Virus record (IMG/VR): IMGVR_UViG_3300047499_000113
Location: 124,001 to 188,000 of that record
Length of the DNA: 64,000 bases
Strand: one strand, 5' to 3'
Position numbers and translations under genes: made by a program. Position 1 is the first letter of the stretch. Every line of letters begins with the position of its first letter. The notes beneath the pieces were generated by a model that was not told the DNA's origin, made no database searches, and saw nothing but the letters and a program-made list of their open reading frames with translations. Shown one piece after another: positions 22,129 to 56,702 of this stretch.

Positions 22129-22371
22129 ATGGGCGAGCTGAACGGGTGGACGAAACTCGGCGATAAGGTCGAGGGCAACGGCAAGTGGCGTCTTTTGAGG
22201 CACGGAGGCAAAACCTTCGATACCTTGAAGCCCAAGGGTGAGTGGCCGCCGGAGCAAGCCGAAAAGGCCACGCGCGAGTACCAGAAGCTGGCCGAAAACG
22301 TGAATATCGGCGGCTTGTGGCTTGTGGCTCCAGACGGCACAGTCGCCGCTCTCATCTTCCGCAATCGCTAG
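22129..22371 (+). CDS. Hypothetical small protein
   Basis: 80-aa ORF filling the gap with plausible codon use. Confidence 0.6.
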   Translation: MGELNGWTKLGDKVEGNGKWRLLRHGGKTFDTLKPKGEWPPEQAEKATREYQKLAENVNIGGLWLVAPDGTVAALIFRNR

Positions 22372-23081
22372 GCGTTCATCAGGTCTTCGACAAGGAATTC
22401 CTTCCAGGCTCGATGGAAGTCGTCCTCTTCGAGGAGTCCCGGAGGGATGTTCTTTTTGAGGAAAGCGACGAGTTCACCCGTGTACTTCATGCGGTGTTTC
22501 TCGCGGAACGCTTCGATGGCTTTGTCGAGCACGTGCTCGCGCTGAGCCTCCGTCCGAGCGTCGCGCACGGTCAGGTTAATGGAATCCTGCACCTTGTACA
22601 GGACTTCGTTGCTGACCATTTTGTTCAAGATCTCGAACGCCGCTTTCTTGCTCAGAAGCACCTGGATGGACACCTTGGACTTGAACGAGTCGAAGAGTCG
22701 ATCGACAACACCGGACGCGTAGTCTTGGAAGCTCTTGGCCTTGATGCGACCCTTGTGATGCGACGTCTTGATTATCGCGTAGACATGCAGGTCGGCGACG
22801 ATGCGCTTCTCCGAGTTCAAGCGCACGTCGGTCTGAACTGAAGGTGCCACGACCTGAGCGTCCGCAAGCTGACGAGCGAACACCGCAAAGTTGGGCTCGA
22901 GCTGCTCCATGTAAACGATCGATTCCGCGTCTTTGCACAGAGCTGGATAAATAAGCCGGTACGCTGTCTGCATGCGCTTGTCTGCTTGGAGAGCAAGCAC
23001 CTGCACGAGCTGCTGACGGAGATCGACCGCCGCGGCCAGGACATCAATGAACCTCTGGCGAGCGTAATCTAGTGTATGCAC
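22368..23081 (-). CDS. Hypothetical protein with C-terminal tag (AWKEFLVEDLMNA)
   Basis: 237 aa. The C-terminus matches the shared VxxVMES-type motif. Confidence 0.7.
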   Translation of the reverse strand: MHTLDYARQRFIDVLAAAVDLRQQLVQVLALQADKRMQTAYRLIYPALCKDAESIVYMEQLEPNFAVFARQLADAQVVAPSVQTDVRLNSEKRIVADLHVYAIIKTSHHKGRIKAKSFQDYASGVVDRLFDSFKSKVSIQVLLSKKAAFEILNKMVSNEVLYKVQDSINLTVRDARTEAQREHVLDKAIEAFREKHRMKYTGELVAFLKKNIPPGLLEEDDFHRAWKEFLVEDLMNA

Positions 23082-23642
23082 GATCTTCCCGAGAAGGAGT
23101 TACGCGAGACCCTACAGCAGCTACGTGATACTGAACAAGTCGTCCGGCTGGCAGTGGACGACGGCCTCGGAGAGAGCATGTTTCCTGGTCTCGTCAGTGC
23201 CATCGAGGGACGCCCAGCATCCGCCAAGGCCATTGCGAACGAGATAGGAACGGATTCTATCTTTCTCGGGATGATGCTCCAGGAGAAGACCAAGGCGCAG
23301 GTGCTCCAGATCGTGCAGCAGACTCTTGCGCGCGGGGAGAAGATCCTCGCTGACAAAGTGAAGCCCGACGACCGCGAAGAGGTCCTCGCCGGCGAGAACT
23401 TTGGCGTGGTGTTCATGCCACCAGAGCTGCTGCGCCAGCTATGGGGCCTCGGAGAGGCGGTTGTGCACTTTCAGGAAGGGAAGAGCGAATCCAAGCGCGT
23501 GGAGCCACGAGCCATCAACGTGATGATGCTCGCCGCGCAGTGGGTTCGCGACGCCAGAACACGTTGGGGACTCCCCGACAGAGTAGAGAAGGTAGAGGTG
23601 GCTCCCCTATTGAAAGAGCCGCCCATGGAGCCGCCGTTCTAG
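23076..23642 (+). CDS. Hypothetical protein
   Basis: 188 aa. TAATCT 5 nt before the ATG. Confidence 0.7.
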   Translation: MHDLPEKELRETLQQLRDTEQVVRLAVDDGLGESMFPGLVSAIEGRPASAKAIANEIGTDSIFLGMMLQEKTKAQVLQIVQQTLARGEKILADKVKPDDREEVLAGENFGVVFMPPELLRQLWGLGEAVVHFQEGKSESKRVEPRAINVMMLAAQWVRDARTRWGLPDRVEKVEVAPLLKEPPMEPPF

Positions 23643-23953
23643 TGGATCTGCATCCGAATGGGCCGCAGGTTCTGCTTGACCTGGTCCATCTTATCCTCAA
23701 GCAATTCCCGCCGATCAGTCACTTCCTCATGGTGCATAGTCACGAGCTTGAGGATGGTCTCGAGAGCAGAATATGCGCCCTCGAGGAGCTTCACGGCTCG
23801 TTGTGGGTTGTCGCGTGAGGCCGCCTGAGTGAGAAGGTCGAGCTGACGCTTCAACTGCGTAATGATTTCTTCGACTTTGTCCGACTCGATGGGCGTGTCC
23901 TCTTCGGGGTCACCAGCAGCTACACGCGCGGCGATTTGCAGGAACCGGCCCAT
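23639..23953 (-). CDS. Small helical protein with N-terminal IAARVAA motif (probable internal head protein)
   Basis: Begins MGRFLQIAARVAAGDPEED. Confidence 0.7.
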   Translation of the reverse strand: MGRFLQIAARVAAGDPEEDTPIESDKVEEIITQLKRQLDLLTQAASRDNPQRAVKLLEGAYSALETILKLVTMHHEEVTDRRELLEDKMDQVKQNLRPIRMQIH

Positions 23954-24017
23954 CGGGGTATACTACTCTTGGACACAAAGGGTCGGAAATACGACCAGGT
24001 GGATAGTATCGAGGGAC

Positions 24018-24287
24018 ATGCGCAAAATCCCCATGCTCAAGTCGGTGCCTCTGGCTCCGAAGGTGTCGGTCGGGGTGCGCCGGCTCGCCGAGGGTTTGTA
24101 CAGGGTCCTTCTCGAGGACCTGACTCAGCGCCAAGCCTCCTACTTCGAAGTTGGAACCCTGCGCGACGGCGCCCTGACAGTCGGCGCCAATCCGCGGGGC
24201 CAAGCGGCAGTCAAGATGCCGGAGTTTCCGGCGGCGATTCAGGAGCTTTCGGACTTCACGACCGTTGACACGGTCATGTCAGAATAG
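24018..24287 (+). CDS. Hypothetical protein with C-terminal tag (DFTTVDTVMSE)
   Basis: Start set at ATG 24018 (GAGG upstream) to avoid overlap with the 23953 gene. Confidence 0.6.
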   Translation: MRKIPMLKSVPLAPKVSVGVRRLAEGLYRVLLEDLTQRQASYFEVGTLRDGALTVGANPRGQAAVKMPEFPAAIQELSDFTTVDTVMSE

Positions 24288-25230
24288 CGATCACTGACTC
24301 GAGATCCGCAGTCACCGCGGCAATGGACGGGCGGGAAGCCTGCTCCACGTTGTTCGCGATGATACGCAGGATGTCGGCCACCGAAGACGGTCCAGCCGAC
24401 AGTTTCGTCTTCTTCGGGTCGAAGGTCATGCCCGTGTCTTTGAGCTGCTGCAGAAGCTCGCCCTTCTTCGAAGCTCGCTCAGCGGGCGACTTGAACATGC
24501 CCTTCGCGAGCATGTCGAGATCCGGCGGACCGAACACGCCGTCGTTCTCGTCGACCATGTGATCGTAGAACGATTCGATGGAGCTGTACGGCCCCGAAAG
24601 GTCCGCCTTCTCTTGCTCGAGCTGCTTCTCGCCCTTCTGGCGAACTTGCTGCTGCTCCTTGTACTTCTGGACCTTCTTCTGCACCGCCTTCGATTTGGAC
24701 TCGAAAGGCGGGTGAGCGACAATGTGCTGGACGAGGTCTTGGACGCCGGCGCCTACGCGTCCGAAGTCCTGCTCCTGCCCAGTGTCCTCGTCCTTGGTCC
24801 AGCTCGGATTGCCCTTCGCATCGAAGTTGATGTCGTAGGTACCGAGGTCGGTCTCCATCGAATACTTGCCCTCGCCAGACGCGCCGGGCAACTTGTGGTA
24901 ATATCCGACCTCAAGGTGGACAGTGTTGGCCTCTCCGGGCTTCGGATTGACGGCAAGGTTTCCCTTGACCAGCAGGCCACCGAGGATGCCGTTGTTGCTC
25001 AGCTCCGAGGGCTTCCCCGGGAAGGAGAAGTTCAGGCCGCTCCAGCCGAAGCCTGCAGACGGGTCTTCTCCGCGAGTGTCCCACTGCCAGTCGATGCCCG
25101 GCACGACTGCATCGACAAGTGGCCTCACGAGGTCTGAAATGGAGACCGCAGTCTCCTTGCTCATGGACACGATCTCGTCGGCCAGGCGCAGACGAGTATA
25201 CGTCGCGGCGAGTTTCTCCCAAACGGGCAT
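24274..25230 (-). CDS. Probable internal head protein with C-terminal VAxILRxIA...PS...V..DL module
   Basis: 318 aa. TAGGCTGTTTAT motif upstream. Module shared with 16171-16578. Confidence 0.7.
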   Translation of the reverse strand: MPVWEKLAATYTRLRLADEIVSMSKETAVSISDLVRPLVDAVVPGIDWQWDTRGEDPSAGFGWSGLNFSFPGKPSELSNNGILGGLLVKGNLAVNPKPGEANTVHLEVGYYHKLPGASGEGKYSMETDLGTYDINFDAKGNPSWTKDEDTGQEQDFGRVGAGVQDLVQHIVAHPPFESKSKAVQKKVQKYKEQQQVRQKGEKQLEQEKADLSGPYSSIESFYDHMVDENDGVFGPPDLDMLAKGMFKSPAERASKKGELLQQLKDTGMTFDPKKTKLSAGPSSVADILRIIANNVEQASRPSIAAVTADLESVIAILT

Positions 25231-25825: not shown

Positions 25826-26149
25826 ATGACTCTCCCGCGCAAAGGCAGCCGCAGTGTCGCCGTCGATGGGCGCATGTTCCGTTGGATGCTATCGGACCCT
25901 CGTAAACGTGAGGTCGAGGGAGATCCGATGCGGACCCGATGCCTTGCCACTCTCACCGTCCAAGAAGACGTGGAGGAGCCGGGTCATGTCTTGCAGCACG
26001 AACTTTCCTGGCTCGAGCACAACTCGGTCACACCCGAAGTCGTCAGGACCGTTGTCCGGCGCGCGATGGATGCTGGTTGGAATCCGTCCTCCAAGAGCGC
26101 TTTCCGCCTCAACAATCAGCGCGTCATCGTCGAAAACATCATGACGTGA
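25826..26149 (+). CDS. Hypothetical protein with C-terminal tag (RVIVENIMT)
   Basis: Begins MTLPRKGSRSVAVDGRMFRW. TACCGT 5 nt before the ATG, divergent from kptA. Confidence 0.7.
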   Translation: MTLPRKGSRSVAVDGRMFRWMLSDPRKREVEGDPMRTRCLATLTVQEDVEEPGHVLQHELSWLEHNSVTPEVVRTVVRRAMDAGWNPSSKSAFRLNNQRVIVENIMT

Positions 26150-32190: not shown

Positions 32191-33081
32191 TCAGCGCGCG
32201 ACGATCAGGCGCACCAGGCCGCGGGGGTTGTACGCCCCGATGCCAAGGTTCTCGAACATTGAGAAACCTATTGTCCGCTCCTCGGGGTTGTCGGCCGAGA
32301 GAACCGTCAGCTCCGTGCGGACCGGGATGCGACCGAAGTGCTCCGGCTCACACGTGATGTAGACGACGCCGGCGGCGACGAGGCGGCTGACGATGAACTG
32401 GGCGTTCCAGCCCGTCGCCATCATGCCCGTCTTCCACAGCGTGGCCTGGCTCTCGATGTCGAGCACGTCGCGCCCGAACTTGCGGATGTCCGCGTAGTCG
32501 GTCGCGTTCATGTAGACGCGAGCGACGCGGAGGTCCTGCCGCTCGATCTCGGCGAACGCGTCCGCGAGAACGGCCGGAGAGATCGGAGCGATGACGGGGA
32601 CGTCGGGGTTGGTCTGCCCCGGCAGCTCGTCGAAGCCGTTGACGGCGAGCGCGTCCATGATGGAGAAGACGCGGTCGTCTTCTGCCGCCTGGACCTGCGC
32701 CTTGCCGAGGTCCTGCATACGCTTGAGGAGGTCGTACCGACGCTCCTTGATCTGCGTGAGCGGGGCCTTGGGCAGGGCGGCGATCTCGAAGAGCGGGAAG
32801 ATCACGCGCCGCGGCTTCATGACCGCGGTGATGCTCTCGCCCTCCTCACCGATGACGTACGCGGTGACATCCGGATCCTTGTCGTAGATCGGGAGAGCAC
32901 CGTCGGGCAGCTGCTCGACCAGGAAGGTCTTGCGACCCACGGACGAGTAGTCGCGCCGCTCGCGGAGCGGCTGGATCATGGACGCCGCGAGGCGCTTGCG
33001 ACCAGCCGAAGAGCCGATGAACTTGTCGACGACCTGCTCCTTGATCGTGTTGTCGACAACCTGAACGCCGAAGGGATTCAT
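32191..33081 (-). CDS. Major capsid protein (short HK97-fold type)
   Basis: 296 aa, extreme GC3 bias, terminator downstream, last in the protease-scaffold-decoration order. GRKRLAASMIQPLR...DY...GRK.FLVEQLPDGA.P.YD resembles, from memory, capsids of Bxz1/Myrna-like large myoviruses. Confidence 0.85.
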   Translation of the reverse strand: MNPFGVQVVDNTIKEQVVDKFIGSSAGRKRLAASMIQPLRERRDYSSVGRKTFLVEQLPDGALPIYDKDPDVTAYVIGEEGESITAVMKPRRVIFPLFEIAALPKAPLTQIKERRYDLLKRMQDLGKAQVQAAEDDRVFSIMDALAVNGFDELPGQTNPDVPVIAPISPAVLADAFAEIERQDLRVARVYMNATDYADIRKFGRDVLDIESQATLWKTGMMATGWNAQFIVSRLVAAGVVYITCEPEHFGRIPVRTELTVLSADNPEERTIGFSMFENLGIGAYNPRGLVRLIVAR

Positions 33082-33109: not shown

Positions 33110-33808
33110 TCAGGCCACGTTCAGCTCGAGGAACATCTCGGAGCTGGTGGCATCGGGTTGAGCGAGCAGTGTGCCCAAGCGGGTCACATCCGGCTCCATG
33201 GGGGTTCCGGCCGTACCGCTTCCGAGCGCGGCAGCGTGGATCCACTGCGCCTCGTACGAATCGGTCCAGTCGTTGGTGAGGTAGCCGTTGACCGAAGCGT
33301 AGAGCTTCTGGCCGGGGCTGTAGACGAGGGCGGTGCCGACGACGCCACCCGAGGTGGACATGCCGGTTCCGGCGACGAACGAGTTCGTCGTCTGCTTCGC
33401 GGTCTCGTACAGCTTGTTGCCGCACGTACCGCCGCGCAGGAACGGTCCCTTGCCCGACGCCGGGCCCGGGGTGTTCTCGTACGCGTTGCCCGCCGCGTCG
33501 TTGATGAAGAGGCCCAGCGGCCTCGTATTCACGACGTAGGCGCTCGAAACGAGCACAGCGCCTCCGACCGTGTTCTCGCCAATGTCGGGCCGAACGAAAG
33601 CGACCGACCCACCGAGAACGCCCTTCTTGACGTTCACCGGAATGGTGGTCGAGACCGCGCCGGCCGTGGTGACGACATTGGGGTTGTTCTGCGTGAATCC
33701 GTCAGGGCTCAAGGACGGGATGGTGTCCTTGAACAGGCTGTACAGGATACGCAGCGCGCTGGTGCTCAGCTTGAAGTCACCAGATGCTTGGCCGCCAATC
33801 GATCCCAT
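33110..33808 (-). CDS. Capsid decoration/minor capsid protein
   Basis: 232 aa, Gly/Thr-rich, immediately upstream of the capsid gene. PLGLFINDA.GN.YEN.PG.ASGK...YET motif. Confidence 0.65.
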   Translation of the reverse strand: MGSIGGQASGDFKLSTSALRILYSLFKDTIPSLSPDGFTQNNPNVVTTAGAVSTTIPVNVKKGVLGGSVAFVRPDIGENTVGGAVLVSSAYVVNTRPLGLFINDAAGNAYENTPGPASGKGPFLRGGTCGNKLYETAKQTTNSFVAGTGMSTSGGVVGTALVYSPGQKLYASVNGYLTNDWTDSYEAQWIHAAALGSGTAGTPMEPDVTRLGTLLAQPDATSSEMFLELNVA

Positions 33809-38407: not shown

Positions 38408-38929
38408 ATGAATACCCCGGCTGCGATCGCTCTCATCGCCGACGTCGAGGTGGTGAAAGTAGAGGTGACGCTCTCCCTGAGCGGGATAGAGAAGAACACC
38501 CCGCTCATCGAGTGTCTCTGGCCACGCGTCACATTCTCGTGCCGGGGCAAGCAGAAGGTGCATCCCTTCACTTACTGGCGCGAGATGATGGAGACCAAAA
38601 AGGACGACCCGAACTTCAAGTACCACACGATGGATGACTTGGTCTTCCTCACAGCGGGTCTCCGGCCCGTCAAGAGGCCATACGTTCTGGCCGATGCCGC
38701 CGAGGCGAAGGCCAAGATGTGCTACAAGAAGATCCAGCAGAAGCTCGCGCAGGCCACGCAGAAGAAGTCCTTCCAGGAGAGGCACCGCAAGCTGATGCGC
38801 AAGATCGAGCGAGCCGCAGGCAAGAAGGCCATCCGAGACCTGCTGCTCAGTCTCCCGCACCGGCTCGAGAAGCGCGACGTCGTGGAAGCCTGGCACGAGG
38901 CGGTTGTCCACAAGGTGATGGAGAGCTAA
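38408..38929 (+). CDS. Hypothetical protein with C-terminal tag (AWHEAVVHKVMES)
   Basis: 173 aa, opposite-strand insertion in the head operon. Confidence 0.75.
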   Translation: MNTPAAIALIADVEVVKVEVTLSLSGIEKNTPLIECLWPRVTFSCRGKQKVHPFTYWREMMETKKDDPNFKYHTMDDLVFLTAGLRPVKRPYVLADAAEAKAKMCYKKIQQKLAQATQKKSFQERHRKLMRKIERAAGKKAIRDLLLSLPHRLEKRDVVEAWHEAVVHKVMES

Positions 38930-38943
38930 TTGTAAGCTCGAGC

Positions 38944-39138
38944 GTGCCGCTCTTCCGCAACTCGCTCGATTACATAGCGCCTGGACAGCTCGTGACGTTT
39001 GGAGGCGACGGGATCTACAAGGTGCTCAAGTGCGAGCCGGACGCGAGTAGACTAATCCCGGGCTTCAAACAGTGGCGGCTGCAGCTCGTCGCTCCGACCG
39101 AAGACGAGGTCGTCGTCTACGAGATCATGGAGAGCTGA
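38944..39138 (+). CDS. Small hypothetical protein with C-terminal tag (DEVVVYEIMES)
   Basis: GTG start 5 nt after TAAGCT; 64 aa, MPLFRNSLDYIAPGQ... Confidence 0.65.
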   Translation: MPLFRNSLDYIAPGQLVTFGGDGIYKVLKCEPDASRLIPGFKQWRLQLVAPTEDEVVVYEIMES

Positions 39139-44139: not shown

Positions 44140-44177
44140 GCAAGCTCTGCCTAGACGGCTTATGGAAAGCCTACCGA

Positions 44178-45971: not shown

Positions 45972-46005
45972 GAGGTCGCTCTCGCACAGCCTTCAAAAAG
46001 GCCAA

Positions 46006-46473
46006 CTACCCGGTCTTCCGCTTCCTGGCCTCTGCCGCCTTTGCCGCCTCCGCCATCTTCCTGAGCTGCTCTCGGACTTCGAGGGGATCCCGCGTGACGC
46101 CGGGAAGGTTGGGATCCAGAACTTCGCGCTTGGCCGCTTCGATGTGACGGACCGAGCGTTCTGATTGCTTTACCAGCTGCGACAGGAAGAACTTGACCCC
46201 AGCCACGCCCTTGAGAGATGCCTGAATGCCGATCCGGCGGCCGACGCGTAGGGACCGAAGCGGCTGACTAGTGTCCAGGTCGTGCAGAAGCTTGAGATGC
46301 TCCTGAATAATCTCATCGAGCGCCGGCGTCAGCTTAGCGATTTTCTCTCGGATGAGCGTATGACGCTTCGAAACCTGATCGACCTCTTGAAGACGGTCCT
46401 GCTGCTCCCGTTCCGAAAGCTCCGGAATGGGTATCACGGCAGGCGCCTGGCCGACCTTGGGCATACCTAACAC
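46006..46473 (-). CDS. Hypothetical coiled-coil protein
   Basis: 155 aa between TerL and portal. Confidence 0.6.
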   Translation of the reverse strand: MLGMPKVGQAPAVIPIPELSEREQQDRLQEVDQVSKRHTLIREKIAKLTPALDEIIQEHLKLLHDLDTSQPLRSLRVGRRIGIQASLKGVAGVKFFLSQLVKQSERSVRHIEAAKREVLDPNLPGVTRDPLEVREQLRKMAEAAKAAEARKRKTG

Positions 46474-46733
46474 TACTTGGCGCGTGCCACCCTGGAAGCG
46501 ATGCTAGCAAGGCGACGGTTGTTGACGAATGCGTCAATTGCATCCTCGATGATCTTGACGCATCCCATGTCGCCACCCATGAGACGTTCCCAGGAGCCTC
46601 CGCGGGCCGCGTAGTCGTGGAATATCTTGACGAAGTCCTCGTTGGAGAGTTTGGTATCCGGCCCGTACACGTGATCCGTGATCTGCCGCACGATCTTGTA
46701 GGCAGTCGTGTCCTTGACGCCGGGCTCTTTCAT
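46473..46733 (-). CDS. Small protein with C-terminal IASRVA motif
   Basis: Ends NRRLASIASRVARAK. Confidence 0.65.
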   Translation of the reverse strand: MKEPGVKDTTAYKIVRQITDHVYGPDTKLSNEDFVKIFHDYAARGGSWERLMGGDMGCVKIIEDAIDAFVNNRRLASIASRVARAK

Positions 46734-46757
46734 CTAGTCTAGTCGACGATTAGGGCT

Positions 46758-48707
46758 TCAGCGGGGTCTTGTCCGTGGGACACGTCGCATGGACGCTCCG
46801 CCTCCGTGCATGCGGTCCCGCATCCGGTGATAGTGATGATACCCGTACGTCGGCACCCGTGACGAAGGCGCCGGGGCGAGGATCGTTCCGGCCGTCAGGA
46901 GGGACGGGTTGTCCTTGACATACTCGTTGGCAAGTGCGACCGAACGGACGAGGGCGTCCGACTGGTCGTCGTGCTTGCCCGCGATCTTTGGCGCCTCGAC
47001 GATGATGATGTTCTTTCCACCCGACGTCGACTGCAGCTCAAGCAGCTCGGAGATGAGCGGGGAATGCTTGCTGCCGTCCCACAGTTTGGTCTCGTCAGCC
47101 TGAGGAATCGGGTAGTCGTACAAGGCGAGCTGTTTGTAGTACATGCTCATCTTGAACCCGTGATACATCTGCGACGAGTCCATAGTCGAGAAGTTGCGCT
47201 GCTCGAATTGGATGAGATGGCGCTTGTGCAGCACTTGTTCGAAGATGGGGCCCGCCCACTGGTCGAACACTCCCTTGATGATGTAGAACCTTCTCGAGAG
47301 TGCGAAGAACCAATCAGCAATGGCTTCGATGTCGAGCCTCGCCTGATCCTGGAGAGTCATGGCGTACGGCACCATCGGCGACGGCAAGTGAGGATTGCAC
47401 TCCGCCCATTTCTTCTTCGGATACCACACCTCGTGGTAAGCCAGCTCTATCCTGCCCGAGTTGACACGAGTCAGAGCGATGGCGGTGCCGTCGCCCGAGA
47501 GACCGAAGTCGACGCCCGCCCAGTGGGGCTCGCGCGGAATGCCAACTTGCTTGGGCCGCAGGTCGGGAACGATGCAAGCCTGAAGGTCCCGGGCGTCCTC
47601 GATGAAACCGCGGACGCGGTCCGAGAACTGAGCGCCGTGCTCCGTCATGAAGCCAGCGGGATCCTTGGCGTACTCCTCCTCGTAGTAGCTCTTGGGAAGG
47701 TCCGGGCGGATTTCCCACGTCGGCGCCTGGATCATGAGCATGTTGCGCGACTCGGGTCCGCCCGTCAGGCTCATCTCGTACTGCTTGTAGAAGAAACCCT
47801 CTCGCGCGTCGGGCGACGAGATGAGAATCATGCGGCCTTCGGTATCACCGACCGCCTTGCGGGTCTTCTTGTCCTTCTTGGCGAACTGCGCGATGGAGGG
47901 CTTGATGGCCTTGTACACGCGTTCGGCCGAGCTTTTGCCGTTGTCGACGAAGAATGCGATCTCGTCGAGAATTGCGCAAATGATACCACGACCGCGGAGA
48001 CCCTTGGCGATGGATGATTTGAACGTCGCCGTAATGGTGCCCTTGCCCTCAGGGCCGAACTTCTTGCGGTCATTTTCCGTTCGGAAGCGCAAGAACGTTT
48101 GCGTGTCGTGCGCCACTGACGACTTGAAGTAGTCGATGGCCTGGATGTGGCCCTGGATGTCGTTGTAGACGATCGACGCCTGCTCTTTGTCGTTCGCGAT
48201 GTCGAGGATACGAATTTCGGAGCCCGGCGGCATGCCGTAGTAAGCCTGCGGGTGCCCGCGCTTGAGGAGCTTGTACAGCTCGTACGCCGCGAAGACGGCC
48301 GAGAGCGCGCTCTTACCAGAACGGCGGCCGAGGATGAGGACCAGCTCGCGGCGCTCTCTCCCGTCCTGCTCGCGGATGTTGCATCGCTTGTTGTCGAACA
48401 GGTACTGAAGGTATTCCTTCTCGGTCAGTTCGAGCTTGATCGCGTCGCCGTACCTGTCGGTGATCTTGATGCACTTCTCGGTGTCGTCGAGCGGGATGTT
48501 GTAGTACAGCTTGATGATGAAGCGCTGCGCGGGGAAAAGCCCGTCCGGGAAGAGCTTGAACCGGTCGATGAATTCGAGAATATTGAGGAACTCAACATCG
48601 CCTTCAGTGTCCGACTTCTGCTGACTGCCTTGCTTCCGCTTCCTGGCGATGAAGCCAGACACCTCTGCAGTCAGCTCGCTCTTGAATACAGGCTCGCGCG
48701 TCGGCAT
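46758..48707 (-). CDS. terL: Terminase large subunit
   Basis: Walker A LGRRSGKS, Walker B ILDEIAFF, motif III ISSP, RNase H-like GVDFG...HDDQSDA. Confidence 0.93.
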   Translation of the reverse strand: MPTREPVFKSELTAEVSGFIARKRKQGSQQKSDTEGDVEFLNILEFIDRFKLFPDGLFPAQRFIIKLYYNIPLDDTEKCIKITDRYGDAIKLELTEKEYLQYLFDNKRCNIREQDGRERRELVLILGRRSGKSALSAVFAAYELYKLLKRGHPQAYYGMPPGSEIRILDIANDKEQASIVYNDIQGHIQAIDYFKSSVAHDTQTFLRFRTENDRKKFGPEGKGTITATFKSSIAKGLRGRGIICAILDEIAFFVDNGKSSAERVYKAIKPSIAQFAKKDKKTRKAVGDTEGRMILISSPDAREGFFYKQYEMSLTGGPESRNMLMIQAPTWEIRPDLPKSYYEEEYAKDPAGFMTEHGAQFSDRVRGFIEDARDLQACIVPDLRPKQVGIPREPHWAGVDFGLSGDGTAIALTRVNSGRIELAYHEVWYPKKKWAECNPHLPSPMVPYAMTLQDQARLDIEAIADWFFALSRRFYIIKGVFDQWAGPIFEQVLHKRHLIQFEQRNFSTMDSSQMYHGFKMSMYYKQLALYDYPIPQADETKLWDGSKHSPLISELLELQSTSGGKNIIIVEAPKIAGKHDDQSDALVRSVALANEYVKDNPSLLTAGTILAPAPSSRVPTYGYHHYHRMRDRMHGGGASMRRVPRTRPR

Positions 48708-48709
48708 GA

Positions 48710-49309
48710 TTACACCGCTTCCGAAATGCGCTTCTCCCACTCGGCCATGTCAGCCTCTATCTGTCGAAAGACCAGGTCGATGTCGTTGTCGGCAACGCCG
48801 GCTTTCTGCATGGCCTCGTGAATGAACTCGAGCCATTGGTGGATGACCTTCTTGAACTCCGGGCTCCTGAAGTCCATCCGCTCTTGGCGGTTGTTCTCCT
48901 GGCGCTTGAGAAGCACATCGGCCAGGTTCCGGAGCATGGAGATGCGGGCGATAGTGTGCTGGACGGTGGGCTTGCCCTCCTTGGTAGCCTTGCGACGTTC
49001 GAATTTGAGGTGGGCGAGTTCTTCAGTGATCTCCTGGATGGCCAGTTCGATCATCTCGCCAGTGGCGCCACGGCGCGTAGCCGCTTGCACCAGTTCCTGG
49101 CGCCTGACGTAGTCCTCGCGCTCCCGAAGCTCCTGCTCGGCTGCTTTCGGGTCGATGACTTCCGGGGTCGGAACGTTCCCGCTCGGGCCGACGATGACCC
49201 CGCTCATGCCGATTTCGCCGGTGTTGATCTTCTTCCCACCGGGGAGGACGAGAAGTTTGCCTTTAGGCTCGTCCTTCTTGTCTTTGTCCTTGTCCTCGGT
49301 GTCGTCCAT
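48710..49309 (-). CDS. Probable terminase small subunit
   Basis: 199-aa helical protein abutting TerL; assigned by position only. Confidence 0.5.
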   Translation of the reverse strand: MDDTEDKDKDKKDEPKGKLLVLPGGKKINTGEIGMSGVIVGPSGNVPTPEVIDPKAAEQELREREDYVRRQELVQAATRRGATGEMIELAIQEITEELAHLKFERRKATKEGKPTVQHTIARISMLRNLADVLLKRQENNRQERMDFRSPEFKKVIHQWLEFIHEAMQKAGVADNDIDLVFRQIEADMAEWEKRISEAV

Positions 49310-49323
49310 ACAGGAACTTTACT

Positions 49324-51369
49324 TCAGCCATCGAGCGACGGGCCACCAATTGTAATCTCGGGGCCCTTCGCGCGAACCTTCGGAGGCTCGACGACCAACT
49401 CGTTGGCCAGTTCGAACGTCTCGACGGGGTTTTCGACTGGAGCGGCCTGCACGACAGGGAGCTTGCGCTTGGCAGCAACTGCTGCCTGACGGACTTGAGT
49501 GGGAACCTGACGGATCAGGGACTTGGCGTACTTGGAGCACCATCCCGGGGCCGTCTGGAGCATGCACCCGGTGCACCCGTCCGAAGCCAGGACGTGCGGA
49601 GCGCCGCGCTTGCGGAACGCCTGGGACCCGACGTTGCACCCCTTGCCGTAGTCGCGGTAGGCGGTCGGGTCGATGAAGAAAACGCCCTGGACGCCGTCGT
49701 CCTTGGCCGCCCGACGTCCCACCTCCGGTACCTGGGTCAGGTCGTCTCGAGAGTACCGCTGGAGGATGGCCGCTTGCAGAGGCTTGCCCGACAGGCCCGT
49801 GTTCATCAGGTGCGAAATCGTGCGACGCACCTCCTCCGGATCCATCTGCGCGACCGCCACCTCAGCCCGACCGGGCTGGAGGGTCTTGATGGTGGCCTGG
49901 ACGCCGGAGTATTGATGCACCTGCTCGTCCGCCGGCGGAATCGGGTTGTGCAGGTTCACGTAAGCGACCGCAGTCGCCCAGCTCTTGATGGAGGCCGACC
50001 GCGCGTTGGCGTTCTGGACTTCTGTCGTCGTCAGTCGGTGCTGCAGAGCTGCACGCTGCAGTGCGAGCAGGAACGTCTCCTTACTGATGGGCTGCTTCTT
50101 GCTCACGATCTTCGTGTACTTGCAGATCTGAGCACATGCGCCGTCCGGAGCGCCCTTGCAGTGCGTGCACGTAGCCGAGCGCCGAATCACGTAGTCGAGA
50201 TGCAGGTCACGCGGATCGATGCCGAGACCGGCTTGGTTCGACTGTCCGTCAGCTGCCAGCTGATGCATCAGGTTCAGCGTGTTGTTGCACCCCTCGAGAG
50301 CGTCCATGTCGAGGTACGTCTTGCCGAGGATTCCGTACTCGGCAACGAGACCGGCGATCTCCGGGTCTTGAGAAGCGGCGAGAACCTGCAGGTCAGCGTC
50401 GCCCTTCATCATCCGCGCCGCGTACTTGAGGAAGCCCGGCGACGGCATCGACTCGACCGGAGCCGAGAACTTGCGGTGCCAGAAGGCATCGTAGTCGGCC
50501 TGCGTCGGCTGGGCCTTGGGCACCGGCTGCTGCGTCTGGACGGTGAGGACACCCTCCGCTCGAGCAGCGATCGGAGTCTTCAGAAACGCAGCACGCAGGA
50601 TTTCCTTGTACTCGCGTGCACTCGCAGGGAGTCCGTTGGCCATCCGGCCCACCGGAACGGGACCGTCCAGACGCTTCTCGCTGGCGAGCGTGGGTGCGTA
50701 GTGAGCCACGACCTTGGCCGTGTATGGAACTTCGGCCACGACGCGCTTGCCGCCGAACGTCTTGCAAATGCCCGTCTTCTGGCAATCGCATCCGCTCGAG
50801 TTGTCGCACCCTCCAAGCACGAACAGAGCGTTCCTGCTCACGGCACGAGCGAACTGGCGCTCCTTCGGATCCTTGCACGCTCGAGGGAAGTAAGAGGCGT
50901 TGATATAGACGTTGCCGAGAAGGCCGCGCTCCGCGATGACTTCGTTGATGGCGTCCTTGGCGCGGCGAATGTCGCCGATGCCGAACTCCGACTGCAGGCG
51001 ACCTGCAATCGTGTTGTTGTCCATCCCCATCATCACCATCTTGGCGACGCGATTCCGGATGGGGGCCGTCTGGTCAGTGGGGGCCGTCTGACCGTAGTCC
51101 TGGCTCAACGGATTGCGGTTGACGATGGTGTGTGGCTTGAGCGGAACGAGCTGCGGGACGTTGAGCGAGCCCTCTTTCGTGTCCGAAATGAGTGCCTTCT
51201 GGAACTCCGGAATGATGTCGAGGTTCTGCTTGGGAAGAGCCTCGGCTGCCCGATAGTCCGCTTCGTCGACCGCGAGCCAGCTCAGGTCAGACACACCCTG
51301 GTTGTGAAGGATCTTGGTCAGATCCCCAAGACCAGAGGTTCCACTGAGATCGGGCAGTTTCTTAGCCAT
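49324..51369 (-). CDS. Large hypothetical head-region protein with three Cys clusters
   Basis: 681 aa. Three repeated units of G..G...y.D/N followed by Cys clusters (CDC...C; CTHC...C; CTGC...WC). Confidence 0.7.
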   Translation of the reverse strand: MAKKLPDLSGTSGLGDLTKILHNQGVSDLSWLAVDEADYRAAEALPKQNLDIIPEFQKALISDTKEGSLNVPQLVPLKPHTIVNRNPLSQDYGQTAPTDQTAPIRNRVAKMVMMGMDNNTIAGRLQSEFGIGDIRRAKDAINEVIAERGLLGNVYINASYFPRACKDPKERQFARAVSRNALFVLGGCDNSSGCDCQKTGICKTFGGKRVVAEVPYTAKVVAHYAPTLASEKRLDGPVPVGRMANGLPASAREYKEILRAAFLKTPIAARAEGVLTVQTQQPVPKAQPTQADYDAFWHRKFSAPVESMPSPGFLKYAARMMKGDADLQVLAASQDPEIAGLVAEYGILGKTYLDMDALEGCNNTLNLMHQLAADGQSNQAGLGIDPRDLHLDYVIRRSATCTHCKGAPDGACAQICKYTKIVSKKQPISKETFLLALQRAALQHRLTTTEVQNANARSASIKSWATAVAYVNLHNPIPPADEQVHQYSGVQATIKTLQPGRAEVAVAQMDPEEVRRTISHLMNTGLSGKPLQAAILQRYSRDDLTQVPEVGRRAAKDDGVQGVFFIDPTAYRDYGKGCNVGSQAFRKRGAPHVLASDGCTGCMLQTAPGWCSKYAKSLIRQVPTQVRQAAVAAKRKLPVVQAAPVENPVETFELANELVVEPPKVRAKGPEITIGGPSLDG

Positions 51370-51378
51370 GACCGTTGA

Positions 51379-52986
51379 TTACTCCCGCTCTTTTACGGGC
51401 TCGGACTTCATTCCTTTGAGCCACTCGTCGTGAGACATGCAGGATTGGCCGCTCTCTCGACAGCTCTTACAGTAAGCTTCGTAGGCGGTCTTGGTCGACT
51501 CCTTCATGGCGTCGTCGTAGCATTTCTCGGCTTCCTTGACGCTACCGTCACTGGCGATCCGGTCCATGTCGATGAGAGCGCGAGTCAGATTCGCCGCGAG
51601 TCGGCGGAGGACGCCGGCGACTTCGGGCTGCAGCACGTATCGGCACTCGAGATCGATGAGCTTGTTGCGGACCCTGGCCACCGTGGTGTTGCCAGCCGTC
51701 GACGCCGCACGCGCCACCGGGAACTCGTCGAGCACGTCTTTGACGAAGACGTTGTGCGAGAGTTTGAGGCACCGGATGATGTCCGATGACAGATATTGCG
51801 GCAGACCACGCGACTGCAGGAATGCCAGCACATGCCGCTTGGTCAGACCCTTCTTGCCGGCTTCCTTGAGGAAGTCCTTCGTCAGGGCCACGACCTGGTT
51901 GATGTTGGTTGCCTGCCTCGAGTTCATCGAAAGTCCTCCGGACGCAAACATGGTAACCCTATCACCGGTCACATCGGCACCAGGGAGCTGGGTTCCACCG
52001 TCCTGGTTGTCACTCCTGTCAAAGTTTATGTTCTCATCAAAGTCTGTTGCAGGAAACCCGTACGGACCCGATACGTCCTCGATCTCCTTGCCGGAAAGCC
52101 AGTTGCCGAGACTCTGGAGAAAATCGTCCATCGTCTCTTCGTTCTTCATCACCGTGGGAAGCGCAGAATCGGAAACTTTTTCCTTTTGACTTGTGTAGGC
52201 GCCGCTGTCCTGGGTGGGCGCCACATAGTCAGTGAAAAGAGCCCGCCTGCTCGACCCGGTATGACCGGGGTGCATATAATCGTAGTAGTCAGTCCGCGCC
52301 GCAGGATTATCACCATCGACAGGAAGCTCCGAGTGCTCTTCGGAAACTTTCTTGCCTTTGGGCCTGATGGCGCCAGGATCACGACCGTCGACGCCCTGCT
52401 CCTGCGGAAGCGTCGTAGCTTCCGCTACGGTCTCCACTCGAGCGTCGTAGACGTCGGTCTTCGGATGGAAGTGCTGGATGTTGGCGTCCTGGTCGCCCGG
52501 AACGAGGCCCACAGCAATGAAGCCGCGGTGCATGAGGGTCCCGAGACGTCCATCGTCACCGTCCGGATAGATTAGACTCCGGTCTGGATTGAAGACGTTG
52601 GCCGGCTGAGCATCTCCAATGGGAGGCTCGTGCTCGCAGTCCTCGTCGCAGACGTGGTCCGGCGGCAGAACGCCATTCGGAAGAGGTCCGAGGCGCATTG
52701 TCATCTCGGACACTGGTGATGTGTCGACCGACACTGGATAGCTGACAGTGCGGCTCTCCGGCTCGTTCGGATACGAGAGCCACTCCTCATCACCGGCCCC
52801 GTTGCCGGGGACCTCGATCTGCGATGACTTGGTGGCGTCGTCTGGCAGCGTGCGGCCTGCAGGCTCGTGCGCCTCAGAGTTCTCCCCGTGATCCCCTTCT
52901 TCGTCTCGCTGGGAATCGTAGGTCCCGATGCCCCAAGTATCGACTTGCTTGGGGAGGGTGCTCTCTGTGGGGAGTGTAGACGGCAT
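51379..52986 (-). CDS. Acidic probable internal head protein
   Basis: ATG at 52986 overlaps the upstream TGA; RQA/RAAS/RIAS motifs. Confidence 0.7.
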   Translation of the reverse strand: MPSTLPTESTLPKQVDTWGIGTYDSQRDEEGDHGENSEAHEPAGRTLPDDATKSSQIEVPGNGAGDEEWLSYPNEPESRTVSYPVSVDTSPVSEMTMRLGPLPNGVLPPDHVCDEDCEHEPPIGDAQPANVFNPDRSLIYPDGDDGRLGTLMHRGFIAVGLVPGDQDANIQHFHPKTDVYDARVETVAEATTLPQEQGVDGRDPGAIRPKGKKVSEEHSELPVDGDNPAARTDYYDYMHPGHTGSSRRALFTDYVAPTQDSGAYTSQKEKVSDSALPTVMKNEETMDDFLQSLGNWLSGKEIEDVSGPYGFPATDFDENINFDRSDNQDGGTQLPGADVTGDRVTMFASGGLSMNSRQATNINQVVALTKDFLKEAGKKGLTKRHVLAFLQSRGLPQYLSSDIIRCLKLSHNVFVKDVLDEFPVARAASTAGNTTVARVRNKLIDLECRYVLQPEVAGVLRRLAANLTRALIDMDRIASDGSVKEAEKCYDDAMKESTKTAYEAYCKSCRESGQSCMSHDEWLKGMKSEPVKERE

Positions 52987-54338
52987 CAGAACTGCGTCTC
53001 CCACAGGTTCGGAATTTCGAGCTTCGGCTTCTTGGGATTCAGGCCCGGCGGCGGGTCAGGCTGCGAATGCTCGCGCAGCCACTTGAGGTCTTCCTCGTTC
53101 ATTCCAAGCGCGTAGTAATCGAGATTTTTGCTGTTGTCGGCGCCCGGGAGCCACGAGTAGGTCTGCGGGAGAGCGGCCACCTTCGTGGCTACCGAGTTCA
53201 GGTCGACGCTCTCTGCGCTCTCCGTGTACGGGTCGCCGAGTCCCGTAGTGCCATCGAGCATCGCATCGTAGCCTTCCGGGAGCTGCTTCTCGGTGTTGAC
53301 GCCGCTGTCGAGTGCTTCCCCAGTGGGATCGTCCGAACCGTATTGCTCGTCGCCATTGAAGCCACCCTCACCCGGACCGATGTGCTCGATGCGGGGACCA
53401 GGCAGGCTGTCCGGATCCACCGATGAGTCCGCGACGCGAGTCGACGCCGTACGCATCTCGTACGCGCGCATTAGATGGGCAATGGCCGAAGCGTAATTGC
53501 CCTGCTCCGGCGTCGTGGTGTGCATCACCATTTCGACGGGGCTTTGGCCCTCGTGCTGTTCGCCCGTACCGCCCGGGAGTTGCGAGCCCTGCTCGCCGGG
53601 CTCCTCGGACTTCTTCTTTTTCTCGAGGATCTTCTTGTCGCGCTTGGCCGTGTCAGCGTAGCTGGAGAGCTGCATCTGGCCGTCGCCGCTGGCGTCGTTG
53701 TCCTCGGACGAACCCTCGTCACCCCAGCCATCGTTGTCGCCGTTGTCGGTCTCGTCGCTCTCGACCTGCGGGTTCATCTCGTCGGCGTTCGGGTTCTCGA
53801 CAGGCTCGTCGAAGGTTTCCTCGGGGTTCTCCTCCTGGAATTCCTCCTCGACAAAGCCGGCCGGATTCTGCTTGACCTCTTCGGTCTGGTCCAGAATCTC
53901 CTCGGCGGGCCCGGACTCTCCGGCGCCCTGCCAATGCGGAGCGTTGATTTCGTCGTCGACAGTATCGGTGAAGGACGAAAGCACCTCCGCCGCCTGCGCG
54001 AGCGACTGGCGCATGTCCTTGATGTTCTGGATATAACCACGGCCACCGAGCAGTCCGTCCGGGCTGATCTGCGCGGACGGCATCTTGGAGAAGAGCCGGA
54101 AGGCCGCCATGGCGTAGCTCTGAGCACGCTGGCTGGCCCACAAGATCTTGGCAAGTTCTCGCAGCGCCTCGGGAGTCCACTGGAAGTCCTGAACGCGGAT
54201 GTCGCGCCGGATCGGACCGGTGTCCTTGACGAACTCGATCTTGCCGGCCGTCCTGACTTGCGGCTTGCCGCGCACTCCGGCCACACGCATGGCGTGGCGA
54301 ATGAGGACACCAGCGGCGATTCGAGAAAGGCGGTCCAT
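52986..54338 (-). CDS. Acidic probable internal head protein
   Basis: Begins MDRLSRIAA...MRVA...VRTA; also RTAS, RVA and KVA motifs. Confidence 0.72.
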   Translation of the reverse strand: MDRLSRIAAGVLIRHAMRVAGVRGKPQVRTAGKIEFVKDTGPIRRDIRVQDFQWTPEALRELAKILWASQRAQSYAMAAFRLFSKMPSAQISPDGLLGGRGYIQNIKDMRQSLAQAAEVLSSFTDTVDDEINAPHWQGAGESGPAEEILDQTEEVKQNPAGFVEEEFQEENPEETFDEPVENPNADEMNPQVESDETDNGDNDGWGDEGSSEDNDASGDGQMQLSSYADTAKRDKKILEKKKKSEEPGEQGSQLPGGTGEQHEGQSPVEMVMHTTTPEQGNYASAIAHLMRAYEMRTASTRVADSSVDPDSLPGPRIEHIGPGEGGFNGDEQYGSDDPTGEALDSGVNTEKQLPEGYDAMLDGTTGLGDPYTESAESVDLNSVATKVAALPQTYSWLPGADNSKNLDYYALGMNEEDLKWLREHSQPDPPPGLNPKKPKLEIPNLWETQF

Positions 54339-55577: not shown

Positions 55578-55601
55578 CGCCAAGGAGCGACCATGGGAAG
55601 C

Positions 55602-55817
55602 CTACCAAATGTCTCGGCCGCTCATCGACGGAGCGTCGAACACCTCGGAATAGAAGCGCTCGAGGTCGTGAAGAAACCCTCGAGTGGCGCGGTTGAGAGA
55701 TCGCCGGTATCGGCGGTTGGCGATCCTTTTGTCTTGGCGTTTGGAAAGGATGCTGTAGTTCACCCAGCGACGAGCCCGTTTGCAGCTGTACTGCACAGCA
55801 GGTAGGACGGTGATCAT
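55602..55817 (-). CDS. Small Arg-rich protein
   Basis: 71 aa, AGGAGG RBS, SKRQDKRIANRRYRR, ends RDIW. Confidence 0.65.
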   Translation of the reverse strand: MITVLPAVQYSCKRARRWVNYSILSKRQDKRIANRRYRRSLNRATRGFLHDLERFYSEVFDAPSMSGRDIW

Positions 55818-55873
55818 GGTCAGAACCTCCTAAAGTCCTGACATGATCGCCTCCTTTCGCGCGTCGAAGTGCA

Positions 55874-56329
55874 TCAGCTCTCCATTACCTCAAAGACTTC
55901 TTCGTGAACTTGTCTCAAAAGAAGGCCCTTGCAGGCCCAGGTCCCGAACTTCTTCCACTTCGGCCGGTGCGTGTAGCCATGCATCCAGCGTTTCTTGGCG
56001 TTGAACGGAACCTCTATGCTCTTGACAGTAATGCAAAGATGTTTCGGACTCACCTCAACGGTCAACTTCCCGTGCCGATGGCTCGTGCCGCGGTTCACAG
56101 CTATCAGGTCGAATGTGATTTCGACGGCACCAGGCAAGTAATTGCTGCTGAGGGTGCCTGGCTGAACTTGGAAATATCGAGAAAGATAGAACGCCCCAAT
56201 CACAGACACGATGGATGGACGAGCCCACTCGCAAGCCGCAGGCAATTCCTTTGGTAGCAGGTCCGCAGGCTGGAGCACTTGCTCCGTCATCTGCTGAGCC
56301 TCATCCACTGTGAAAAGGTGGGTCTTCAC
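55874..56329 (-). CDS. Hypothetical protein with C-terminal tag (HEEVFEVMES)
   Basis: 151 aa, AT-richer than its flanks. Confidence 0.65.
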   Translation of the reverse strand: MKTHLFTVDEAQQMTEQVLQPADLLPKELPAACEWARPSIVSVIGAFYLSRYFQVQPGTLSSNYLPGAVEITFDLIAVNRGTSHRHGKLTVEVSPKHLCITVKSIEVPFNAKKRWMHGYTHRPKWKKFGTWACKGLLLRQVHEEVFEVMES

Positions 56330-56369
56330 GCCGCTATTCTTGGGGTCAAGTTGCCGCTATTCTTGGGGT
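56330..56369. repeat. 17-bp direct repeat gccgctattcttggggt x2
   Basis: Copies at 56330-56346 and 56353-56369, directly upstream of the 56329 start. Confidence 0.85.
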
Positions 56370-56510
56370 ATTAGGTCGCTCCCGCAGCCTGAGCCCGGGA
56401 ATAGAGAGTCGTAACGACTCTTAGCAACATCCCTTTGGATTGATGTCGTCATCGCGGCTTCACGTGCACGGTGCCTCGGGACAGTGAGATTACACCGTCG
56501 TCGGGCAGAC

Positions 56511-56702
56511 CTACGATTCGTGGACTTGGCGGGCGACGCGAACGATGTATTCTTCCGTAGGTGGCGGGCCTGCGAGTGGTCCCATCCTCGCACCGCACCT
56601 CTTGCAGACGCGGACGAGCGCGGCCATCGAAGGGTTGCCGGACTTGCGGCGCTCCGTTTTGGGGAGCTTCTGCCACTCGTGGCCAAAGTTACGCGCCGTC
56701 AC
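56511..56702 (-). CDS. Small zinc-finger-like protein with C-terminal tag (VRVARQVHES)
   Basis: GTG 56702 with GGGGAG RBS; 63 aa, HEW...CKRCG. Confidence 0.6.
   Translation of the reverse strand: MTARNFGHEWQKLPKTERRKSGNPSMAALVRVCKRCGARMGPLAGPPPTEEYIVRVARQVHES

What the first reader, a model, noticed from the sequence alone, without database searches (positions are those of the whole stretch)
22368..56702. Family of unrelated small proteins sharing a C-terminal VxxVMES tag: candidate undescribed modular effector/adaptor system
Seen: seven scattered ORFs on both strands, with no visible N-terminal similarity, end in the same motif right at the stop. 22368-23081 WKEFLVEDLMNA*; 24018-24287 DFTTVDTVMSE*; 25826-26149 QRVIVENIMT*; 38408-38929 WHEAVVHKVMES*; 38944-39138 DEVVVYEIMES*; 55874-56329 VHEEVFEVMES*; 56511-56702 IVRVARQVHES*. 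Consensus: hydrophobic-[VA]-x-x-[VIL]-[MH]-[ESNT]-(S/A/E)-COOH, an amphipathic helix with a free C-terminus. None of the recognised enzymes or structural proteins here carries it, and two members (25826, 38944) have leaderless -10 promoters, suggesting early expression. Inference: variable target-binding domains are grafted onto a common docking tail. The tail could recruit a shared hub such as a host AAA+ protease (as the SspB C-terminal peptide docks ClpX), a phage scaffold or an export system, giving a toolkit for neutralising host proteins.
Basis: partly seen in the sequence, partly recalled or inferred. Interest (0 to 1): 0.92.

Follow-up and report, generated by a model that had tools for sequence, protein, structure and literature searches.

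The report
Shared C-terminal helix tag, huge phages
In one clade of uncultivated huge phages, more than twenty otherwise unrelated proteins end in the same short helix (…V-x-x-V-M-E-S-stop), which most likely docks them to one common partner; that partner and its purpose are still unknown.

Summary
The window is part of a 240-kb uncultivated phage contig. ATGGAGAGCTRA occurs three times, each time as the in-frame end of a long ORF. ORF 25826 is a possible one-residue-shorter variant, and 24018 is doubtful.

The tag is selected at the protein level. Relatives with GC 0.31-0.65 keep the residues while the codons vary (Ser as TCN or AGC, all three stop codons). In families A, D and E it is the best-conserved segment. 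About 1 Mb of related contigs holds 45 distinct tagged ORFs. They fall into 26 BLAST clusters once the tag is removed. They include a core gene of the head module, a His/Cys3 zinc-ribbon family, a DHHA1 phosphoesterase and a Tad2-like (Thoeris anti-defence) protein. Two more distant relatives lack the tag in the 50 kb sampled from each.

Consensus: h-x3-[C/W]-x-E-x-h-[V/A]-x-x-[V/I]-[M/H]-[E/D]-[S/T]-COOH, an acidic amphipathic helix.

Best reading: a clade-specific docking or sorting helix for one common partner, probably phage-encoded, possibly for virion packaging. The partner was not identified.

The parts
38408..38929 (+). Family A: 173-aa core gene lying antisense inside the head/structural block, ending ...EAWHEAVVHKVMES. 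The tag is the last ~12-18 codons (about 38876-38926).
   Evidence: Syntenic orthologues are only 18-27% identical in distant relatives, yet they keep ...[VI][MH][ED][ST/L/R] (A1, A3). The AF2 model has pLDDT 84.6, with the C-terminal helix at residues 155-172. No PDB fold match and no Pfam hit.
38944..39138 (+). Family C: 64-aa ORF directly downstream of A, ending ...EDEVVVYEIMES.
   Evidence: Coding-like GC3 of 0.80. An ORF in the same position in L050 (11543-11725) ends ...ELVFRIMES. Absent from L006, where the neighbouring genes abut.
55874..56329 (-). Family D: 151-aa ORF ending ...QVHEEVFEVMES, inside an insert (55584-57792) that L006 lacks.
   Evidence: Homologues are 51-67% identical overall, with EEVFEVMES invariant (A6).
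56511..56702 (-). Family B member: small His/Cys zinc-ribbon-like protein ending ...EEYIVRVARQVHES. It lacks the third Cys.
   Evidence: It aligns with the H-[DE]-W ... CxxCG ... C-x-E...VMES family. A profile search of 1.84 billion representatives found 12 members, of which the 11 sequences examined all carry the tag or a close variant (VTEI, VHEC, IHDS) at the C-terminus. The AF2 model shows three strands plus a C-terminal helix starting at the last Cys.
22368..23081 (-). Family E: 237-aa protein ending ...DDFHRAWKEFLVEDLMNA (W-type tag).
   Evidence: It aligns over 14 residues with the A tag. The last ~40 residues are the most conserved part of the family. Distant homologues end ADVMEEGVR or ADVMEDS (A5).
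25826..26149 (+). Possible variant member ending ...RVIVENIMT, one residue shorter than the consensus.
   Evidence: It matches V..[VIL]M near the stop. The PSSM gives 9.6 bits only when shifted by one residue. No homologues were examined.
24018..24287 (+). Doubtful member ending ...TVDTVMSE.
   Evidence: It has V(-7), V(-4) and M(-3), but S-E instead of E-S. It does not score with the PSSM. No homologues were examined.

Best explanation
The tag is a clade-specific C-terminal recognition helix of about 12-16 residues, acidic and amphipathic. Its hydrophobic positions are -16, -12, -8/-7 and -4/-3, and it ends [M/H]-[E/D]-[S/T]-COOH. It has been kept, or acquired independently, on many unrelated accessory proteins and on one core head-module protein of a lineage of huge phages.

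Its most likely job is to dock all these proteins to one common partner that co-evolves with the clade, and is therefore probably phage-encoded. This would make it a sorting or recruitment signal. My preferred sub-hypothesis (about 0.25) is targeting to the assembling head, so that pre-made accessory or counter-defence proteins are packaged and delivered with the DNA. The precedents are the T4 internal proteins and the P1 Dar proteins.

Shown: the motif, its enrichment, selection at the protein level, its spread over unrelated families, and its restriction to the clade.
Inferred: that a common partner exists.
Speculative: the partner's identity and the packaging role.
For: - Enrichment at C-termini far above the internal frequency of the same pattern.
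- Residues are conserved while codons vary: Ser as TCT/AGC/TCG/TCC/TCA, Val as four codons, and all three stops, across GC 0.31-0.65.
- The tag is the best-conserved segment of families A, D and E.
- There are 45 distinct tagged ORFs in 26 BLAST clusters once the tag is removed. They cover different folds: a DHHA1 enzyme, a Tad2-like domain, His/Cys3 zinc ribbons and an alpha/beta-plus-helical protein. Independent self-association would not hold the same sequence across families.
- The tag is absent from 50 kb each of two more distant relatives. There the A-like ORF ends ...VREVFNR.
- For packaging specifically: family A is a core gene inside the head block, and tagged small genes sit directly after the major capsid gene (L050) or the portal gene (L012, L019, L033, L036, L037).
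- Two carriers have plausible counter-defence domains.
Against: - No partner was identified, and no complex prediction could be run.
- AF2 places the helix as a structured part of families A and B. In family B it begins at a zinc ligand. It may therefore be partly buried rather than a free tail.
- In family E, distant homologues carry 2-4 extra residues after the motif, so a free carboxylate at a fixed distance is not absolute.
- Some family B members end VTEV or VTEI.
- Many tagged genes lie antisense to the late structural genes, which does not obviously fit late expression.
- The scaffold-position gene (33110-33808) lacks the tag.
- Only parts of each genome were sampled.
Confidence: 0.55

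Rival explanations
1. The tag is an intrinsic structural or oligomerisation helix. It either completes each protein's own fold (a treble-clef-like helix in the zinc ribbons, a helical bundle in family A) or drives self-assembly or mutual co-assembly of tagged proteins. No separate hub is involved. The shared sequence would reflect common descent of a small C-terminal module spread by recombination.
For: AF2 predicts a confident helix in both modelled families. In family B the helix starts at the conserved last Cys (A4). Many small members belong to one zinc-ribbon superfamily. W-type members share about 20 residues, D-h-x-x-x-W-x-[ED].... The register is not absolute in family E.
Against: Independent folding or homo-oligomerisation does not explain why -4 to -1 stay [VI]-M-[ED]-[ST] across at least 20 families with different folds while the rest diverges beyond detection. 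It also does not explain termination right after the motif. An acidic residue plus the carboxylate at a helix C-terminus is not a stabilising design. Carriers include DHHA1 and Tad2-like domains that are not tagged elsewhere.
Confidence: 0.2
2. One reading: the tag docks proteins to a host hub such as a ClpX, ClpA or ClpC N-domain, Lon or FtsH. It would act as an adaptor-type tail or as a degron that times the removal of accessory proteins.
For: The location is strictly C-terminal, and the carriers are small accessory proteins. C-terminal peptides are a common currency of bacterial AAA+ proteases (established knowledge).
Against: From memory, and not tested here, the tag resembles no known class: ssrA-like LAA, MuA-like basic tails, the SspB LRVVK tail, or non-polar Tsp/FtsH tails. 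The tag ends polar and acidic. The clade spans GC 0.31-0.65, hence probably many host phyla. The next-closest phages lack the tag, which is odd for a universal host hub. A core head-module protein carries it.
Confidence: 0.1
3. The tag is a nucleic-acid-level element at gene ends: a Shine-Dalgarno sequence (GGAG within ATGGAG) for a coupled downstream gene, a promoter or terminator element, or a recombination site.
For: The three window copies are identical at ATGGAGAGC, although AGC makes up only 0.19 of Ser codons. GGAG lies inside the motif.
Against: Across relatives Ser is TCT/TCG/TCC/TCA/AGC, Glu is GAG/GAA, Asp replaces Glu, Val uses four codons and all three stops occur. Conserved positions extend to -7, -8 and -12 at the amino-acid level. 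39138 is followed by a convergent gene. 55874 is followed by a separate AAGGAGG site. 38929 lies 19 nt from the next start.
Confidence: 0.03

Closest known systems
T4 capsid-targeting sequence (CTS) of the internal proteins IPI, IPII and IPIII (T4 head reviews PMC3012670 and PMC9958956, listed but not read here; this comparison rests on my own knowledge)
   Same: A short shared peptide on otherwise unrelated, fast-evolving accessory proteins of a large phage, at least one of which (IPI*) is a counter-defence protein. It recruits them to one phage-encoded structure.
   Different: The CTS is N-terminal, about 10 residues long, and is removed by the prohead protease after L/I-x-E. The tag here is C-terminal and helical, and nothing shows packaging or cleavage.
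Encapsulin cargo-loading peptides
   Same: A C-terminal tag on unrelated cargo enzymes that binds the inside of an HK97-fold shell. Cargo genes often lie next to the shell gene. In L050, two or three tagged genes directly follow the major capsid gene.
   Different: Encapsulin tags are extended Gly/Ser-rich peptides (LxIGSLK-like, from memory) on flexible linkers. The tag here is an acidic amphipathic helix joined directly to the fold, and its sequence is unrelated.
Sliding-clamp-binding tails of T4 gp43, gp33 and gp55, and PIP or QL[SD]LF motifs
   Same: Unrelated phage proteins share a C-terminal tail that docks to one phage-encoded hub.
   Different: The consensus is unrelated. This phage's own FEN ends in a PIP-like QVPLESWL, so the clamp motif appears to be a different one. 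The tagged proteins are not replication proteins.
SspB C-terminal ClpX-binding peptide, HbYX, and EEVD/TPR-type C-terminal docking peptides
   Same: The same concept of a free C-terminal peptide recognised by a hub.
   Different: No sequence resemblance. Those hubs are cellular, whereas this tag is confined to one phage clade.
P1 Dar anti-restriction proteins packaged in the head (PMC12810830, PMC9024508; both listed by the paper searches, not read here)
   Same: Counter-defence proteins delivered from the capsid, with incorporation tied to head morphogenesis.
   Different: No shared linear C-terminal motif is described for them. The relation here is only functional analogy.

Membership tests
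T4-type capsid-targeting sequence | N-terminal position, about 10 residues, ending in a prohead-protease site (L/I-x-E) | tested here: not met
   The motif is at the extreme C-terminus in all members. [VI]-M-E resembles L/I-x-E, but only one residue follows it.
T4-type capsid-targeting sequence | Carriers are present inside proheads or virions | not testable with these tools
   There is no isolate or proteome for this clade. The cultured relative Tunturi_5 lacks the tag in its first 50 kb.
Encapsulin cargo-loading peptide | C-terminal tag on unrelated cargo proteins | tested here: met
   26 BLAST clusters carry it.
Encapsulin cargo-loading peptide | Gly/Ser-rich extended consensus on a flexible linker | tested here: not met
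   The tag is a helix of period about 3.6 with consensus [C/W]xExh[VA]xx[VI]M[ED][ST].
Encapsulin cargo-loading peptide | Cargo gene lies adjacent to the HK97-fold shell gene | tested here: inconclusive
   True for 2-3 small genes in L050, but not in the window.
Clamp-binding motif (QL[SD]LF or PIP box) | Q-x-x-[LIM]-x-x-[FYW]-[FYWL] or QL[SD]LF consensus | tested here: not met
   The tag has no Gln or aromatic pair. The FEN at 58737-59774 carries a separate PIP-like end.
AAA+ protease degron or SspB-type docking tail | Non-polar or basic C-terminal consensus (LAA, RRKKAI, LRVVK) | tested here: not met
   The tag ends [ED]-[ST], and the net charge of the last 12 residues is 0 to -5 in 21 of 23 families. 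The reference consensuses are recalled from memory.
AAA+ protease degron or SspB-type docking tail | Tag-dependent binding or degradation | not testable with these tools
   This needs an experiment.
Shine-Dalgarno / translational-coupling element | Conservation at the nucleotide level, with a downstream start 5-10 nt away | tested here: not met
Zinc ribbon / treble-clef-like finger (family B bodies only) | Conserved His/Cys ligands, with a CxxC knuckle on a beta-hairpin and a ligand at the start of a helix | tested here: inconclusive
   H17, C38, C41 and C60 are invariant or nearly invariant (A4). AF2 gives strands plus a helix starting at C60. Pfam gives only sub-threshold zf-tcix and L37e hits. 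No PDB match has E<0.001. The window's own member lacks the third Cys.
Tad2-like / DUF2829 (PF11195), carrier in L051 only | Pfam score above the gathering threshold | tested here: met
   35.7 bits against a cut-off of 25, E 1.3e-8. Anti-Thoeris activity was not tested.

The most novel reading that the evidence does not exclude
A previously undescribed protein-sorting code in a lineage of huge phages. A C-terminal helix ending V-M-E-S marks roughly 5-15% of the proteome, including counter-defence modules. A phage-encoded receptor reads it, for example the capsid interior or core, or the conserved tagged protein A itself. The tagged proteins are thereby loaded into the virion and injected ahead of gene expression. 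If so, the tag would be a ready-made handle for finding new injected effectors in metagenomes and for loading foreign cargo.
Probability: 0.25. Interest if true: 0.85.

Novelty: new variant of a known kind. Interest (0 to 1): 0.68.

Why it matters
Shared terminal peptides are how cells and viruses sort proteins, as with signal peptides, the T4 CTS, encapsulin tags and clamp-binding tails. A new one would help in three ways.

- It would assign a common fate to dozens of 'hypothetical' proteins of huge phages. These proteins are otherwise opaque to homology searches.
- It would give a simple sequence rule for harvesting accessory and counter-defence candidates from metagenomes. Two carriers already have a Tad2-like or a DHHA1 domain.
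- It would point to an unknown receptor in a lineage with genomes up to 436 kb.

The question is directly testable with synthetic genes, by comparing tag-bearing and tag-deleted proteins in pull-downs.

Tried and rejected
- DNA-level explanations (Shine-Dalgarno, terminator, repeat): rejected on codon variation and downstream context.
- Chance: rejected.
- Hidden homology between the window's members: BLASTP found nothing outside the tag.
- Pfam and PHROGs on the window's members: no family. The only hit was a weak 'anti-repressor' PHROG match for 22368.
- Tag-restricted word search in 5.8 billion proteins: it returned only close orthologues of 38408. A tag-only profile tops out near 30 bits locally.
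- Fold searches with both AF2 models against the PDB: no match with E<0.001.
- PDB sequence searches with the neighbouring large proteins: only the intein was found.
- Anchor 24274-25230 in IMG/VR: self only.
- Walking the 240-kb contig: the first look-up failed on a wrong start. The second showed that giant genes make walking too costly.
- Host inference from MAG bins: the phyla are inconsistent, which suggests mis-binning.
- The major capsid protein's internal segment resembling the tag: treated as chance.
- Co-variation of tag variants within one genome: too few tagged genes per locus. The only hint is that L051 favours a terminal Thr in 5 of its 6 strong tags.
Full report
**What the window is.** It is a 64-kb stretch (contig positions 124004-188003) of a 240,015-bp IMG/VR contig of an uncultivated phage.
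- Recognisable genes include the large terminase (46758-48740), portal (44178-45971), an HK97-type major capsid protein (32191-33081) and a helicase.
- Others are an RNA 2'-phosphotransferase, a clamp loader, a FEN-type exonuclease and a protein with two sigma-70 region-4 domains.
- Megablast of 34000-54000 found nothing in the GenBank phage collection.
- By portal protein, the nearest GenBank records are an unannotated 485-kb uncultured phage (47% identity), Tunturiibacter phage Tunturi_5 (38%) and Bacillus phage G (28%).
- Scans with the terminase, portal, helicase, sigma-4 protein and capsid protein retrieved about 80 loci of one clade. Portal identity across these is 63-92%, contigs reach 436 kb, and GC ranges from 0.31 to 0.65.

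**Checking the observation.**
- ATGGAGAGC occurs three times in 128 kb of both strands, each time followed by an in-frame stop.
- In six-frame translation the pattern V..[VIL]M occurs 23 times. Twelve of these fall in long ORFs, and six of those twelve sit one or two residues from the stop.
- [VI]M[ED][ST] at the C-terminus of ORFs of at least 60 codons: 3 against 0.02 expected in the window, and 13 against 0.16 in relatives.
- A 10-residue matrix applied to 25 loci that played no part in its construction gave 11 hits against 0.72 expected.

**Protein level or DNA level.** The orthologue of 38408 is syntenic in relatives and only 18-27% identical in the distant ones.
- It still ends VAQEIMES, VAEKIMES, LAESVMDS, AVRHVMET or VVRSVMES. 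In one sub-lineage it ends VVADVHDR or VVQDVHDL.
- Over 41 distinct tag-coding sequences, Ser(-1) is TCT 8, AGC 7, TCG 6, TCC 3 and TCA 2.
- In the same set, Val(-4) uses four codons, Glu is GAG or GAA or is replaced by Asp, and all three stops are used.
- This rules out a Shine-Dalgarno, terminator or recombination-site explanation. So does the downstream context of the three window copies.
- The three identical AGC codons in the window are mildly unusual, since AGC is 0.19 of Ser codons. They remain unexplained.

**Anatomy of the tag.** Using one representative per family (23 families):
- hydrophobic residues occupy -16 (0.74), -12 (0.83), -8 (0.78), -7 (0.96), -4 (0.96) and -3 (0.87);
- -12 is Cys (9) or Trp (4);
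- -10 is often Glu;
- -3 is Met (19) or His (2);
- -2 is Glu or Asp (19);
- -1 is Ser or Thr (21);
- net charge of the last 12 residues is negative in 20 of the 23.

The spacing is that of an amphipathic helix. AF2 predicts such a helix in family A (residues 155-172, model pLDDT 84.6) and in family B (residues 60-70, starting at the last conserved Cys).

**Who carries it.** In about 1 Mb of clade sequence there are 45 non-identical tagged ORFs. They fall into 26 BLAST clusters once the last 14 residues are removed.
- Family A (38408) is a core gene that lies antisense within the head block.
- Family B is a small (58-157 aa) H-[DE]-W ... CxxCG ... C-x-E ... VMES zinc-ribbon-like family.
- A profile search of 1.84 billion representative proteins found only 12 family B members at E<0.001. 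The 11 whose sequences I examined all end in the tag or a close variant. Two further members found in the loci end VTEV and VTEI. Family B genes often sit directly after the portal gene.
- Families C (38944), D (55874) and E (22368) are unrelated to these and to each other. In D and E the tag is the most conserved segment (A5, A6).
- In L050, whose capsid protein is 97.6% identical, two or three tagged small genes directly follow the capsid gene.
- In L051, six strongly tagged genes cluster within 19 kb. They include a DHHA1-domain phosphoesterase and a protein with a Tad2-like (Thoeris anti-defence 2) domain above Pfam's threshold.
- No recognised structural or replication protein in the window has the tag.
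- The FEN ends in a PIP-like QVPLESWL, so the clamp-binding motif appears to be a different one.

**Limits of the clade.** The first 50 kb of Tunturi_5 has a best C-terminal score of 0.3 bits. The 50 kb around the portal of LR745208 has a best score of 2.5 bits. In LR745208 an A-like ORF ends ...VWDKGGLKRVREVFNR. The tag therefore seems confined to the narrower clade.

**Interpretation.** Several lines argue for a common reader of the tag rather than independent structural roles:
- near-identical last four residues on proteins of different folds;
- termination right after them;
- strongest conservation at the tag within families;
- restriction to one phage lineage that probably infects very different hosts.

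Packaging into the head is attractive for three reasons: a core head-module protein carries the tag, tagged genes cluster next to the capsid and portal genes, and some carriers look like counter-defence proteins. T4 internal proteins and P1 Dar are the precedents. This remains conjecture.

Against a simple 'free tail' model:
- the helix is predicted as structured and, in family B, anchored by a zinc ligand;
- distant family E homologues extend 2-4 residues past the motif.

The structural or co-assembly rival therefore keeps appreciable weight.

**Novelty.** I found no Pfam, PHROG or PDB counterpart for the tag or for families A-E. Two literature searches returned only the known N-terminal T4 CTS and P1 Dar work. 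The kind of thing, a shared terminal docking or sorting peptide, is known. This motif, its clade and its unknown receptor appear undescribed.

Noticed in passing
window 1-5938 (- strand): This stretch is the 3' part of a 2295-aa gene, followed upstream by another gene of at least 1567 aa (called genes in L082). That explains the GC of 0.67-0.69 and the strong AT skew here. The long + strand ORFs in this region are antisense artefacts.
   Followed up: partly
window 35526-38330 (- strand): A 934-aa conserved protein of unknown function carries a LAGLIDADG-type intein at about residues 429-576. Its counterpart ORF in L050 is only 549 codons, stop to stop, with 357 residues aligning. That suggests an intein-free allele.
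   Followed up: partly
window 58737-59774 and 60348-61769 (- strand): The FEN / 5'-3' exonuclease ends in a PIP-box-like QVPLESWLEGI. A clamp-loader AAA+ gene lies next to it. The phage therefore probably has its own clamp system with a motif distinct from the VMES tag.
   Followed up: partly
window 57793-58566 (- strand): A protein with two sigma-70 region-4 domains and no region 2. It is 56-84% identical across the clade. It may be an unusual transcription factor and is a candidate hub.
   Followed up: no
window 55584-57792: This segment is absent from L006, where the flanking genes are adjacent. It holds two tagged ORFs (D and B) and an inosine-uridine nucleoside hydrolase, so it is a variable accessory island.
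   Followed up: partly
window 32191-33081, residues 121-144 of the capsid protein: The internal segment RMQDLGKAQVQAAEDDRVFSIMDA weakly resembles the W-type tag of family A orthologues (E 0.08 in a small local database). It is almost invariant in relatives. This is probably chance.
   Followed up: partly
window 38918-38929, 39127-39138, 55874-55885: All three MES tags in this genome use the same codons, ATG GAG AGC, although AGC is only 0.19 of Ser codons. This may hint at recent intragenomic copying of the tag-coding end.
   Followed up: no
L083-L091 (genome contigs): Contigs of this phage clade are binned into MAGs of unrelated phyla: Kerfeldbacteria, Anaerolineaceae, Methylobacter, Altiarchaeales, Lysinibacter, Legionellales and Nitrospirae. 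This is evidently mis-binning, so it gives no host information.
   Followed up: no
   Followed up: no
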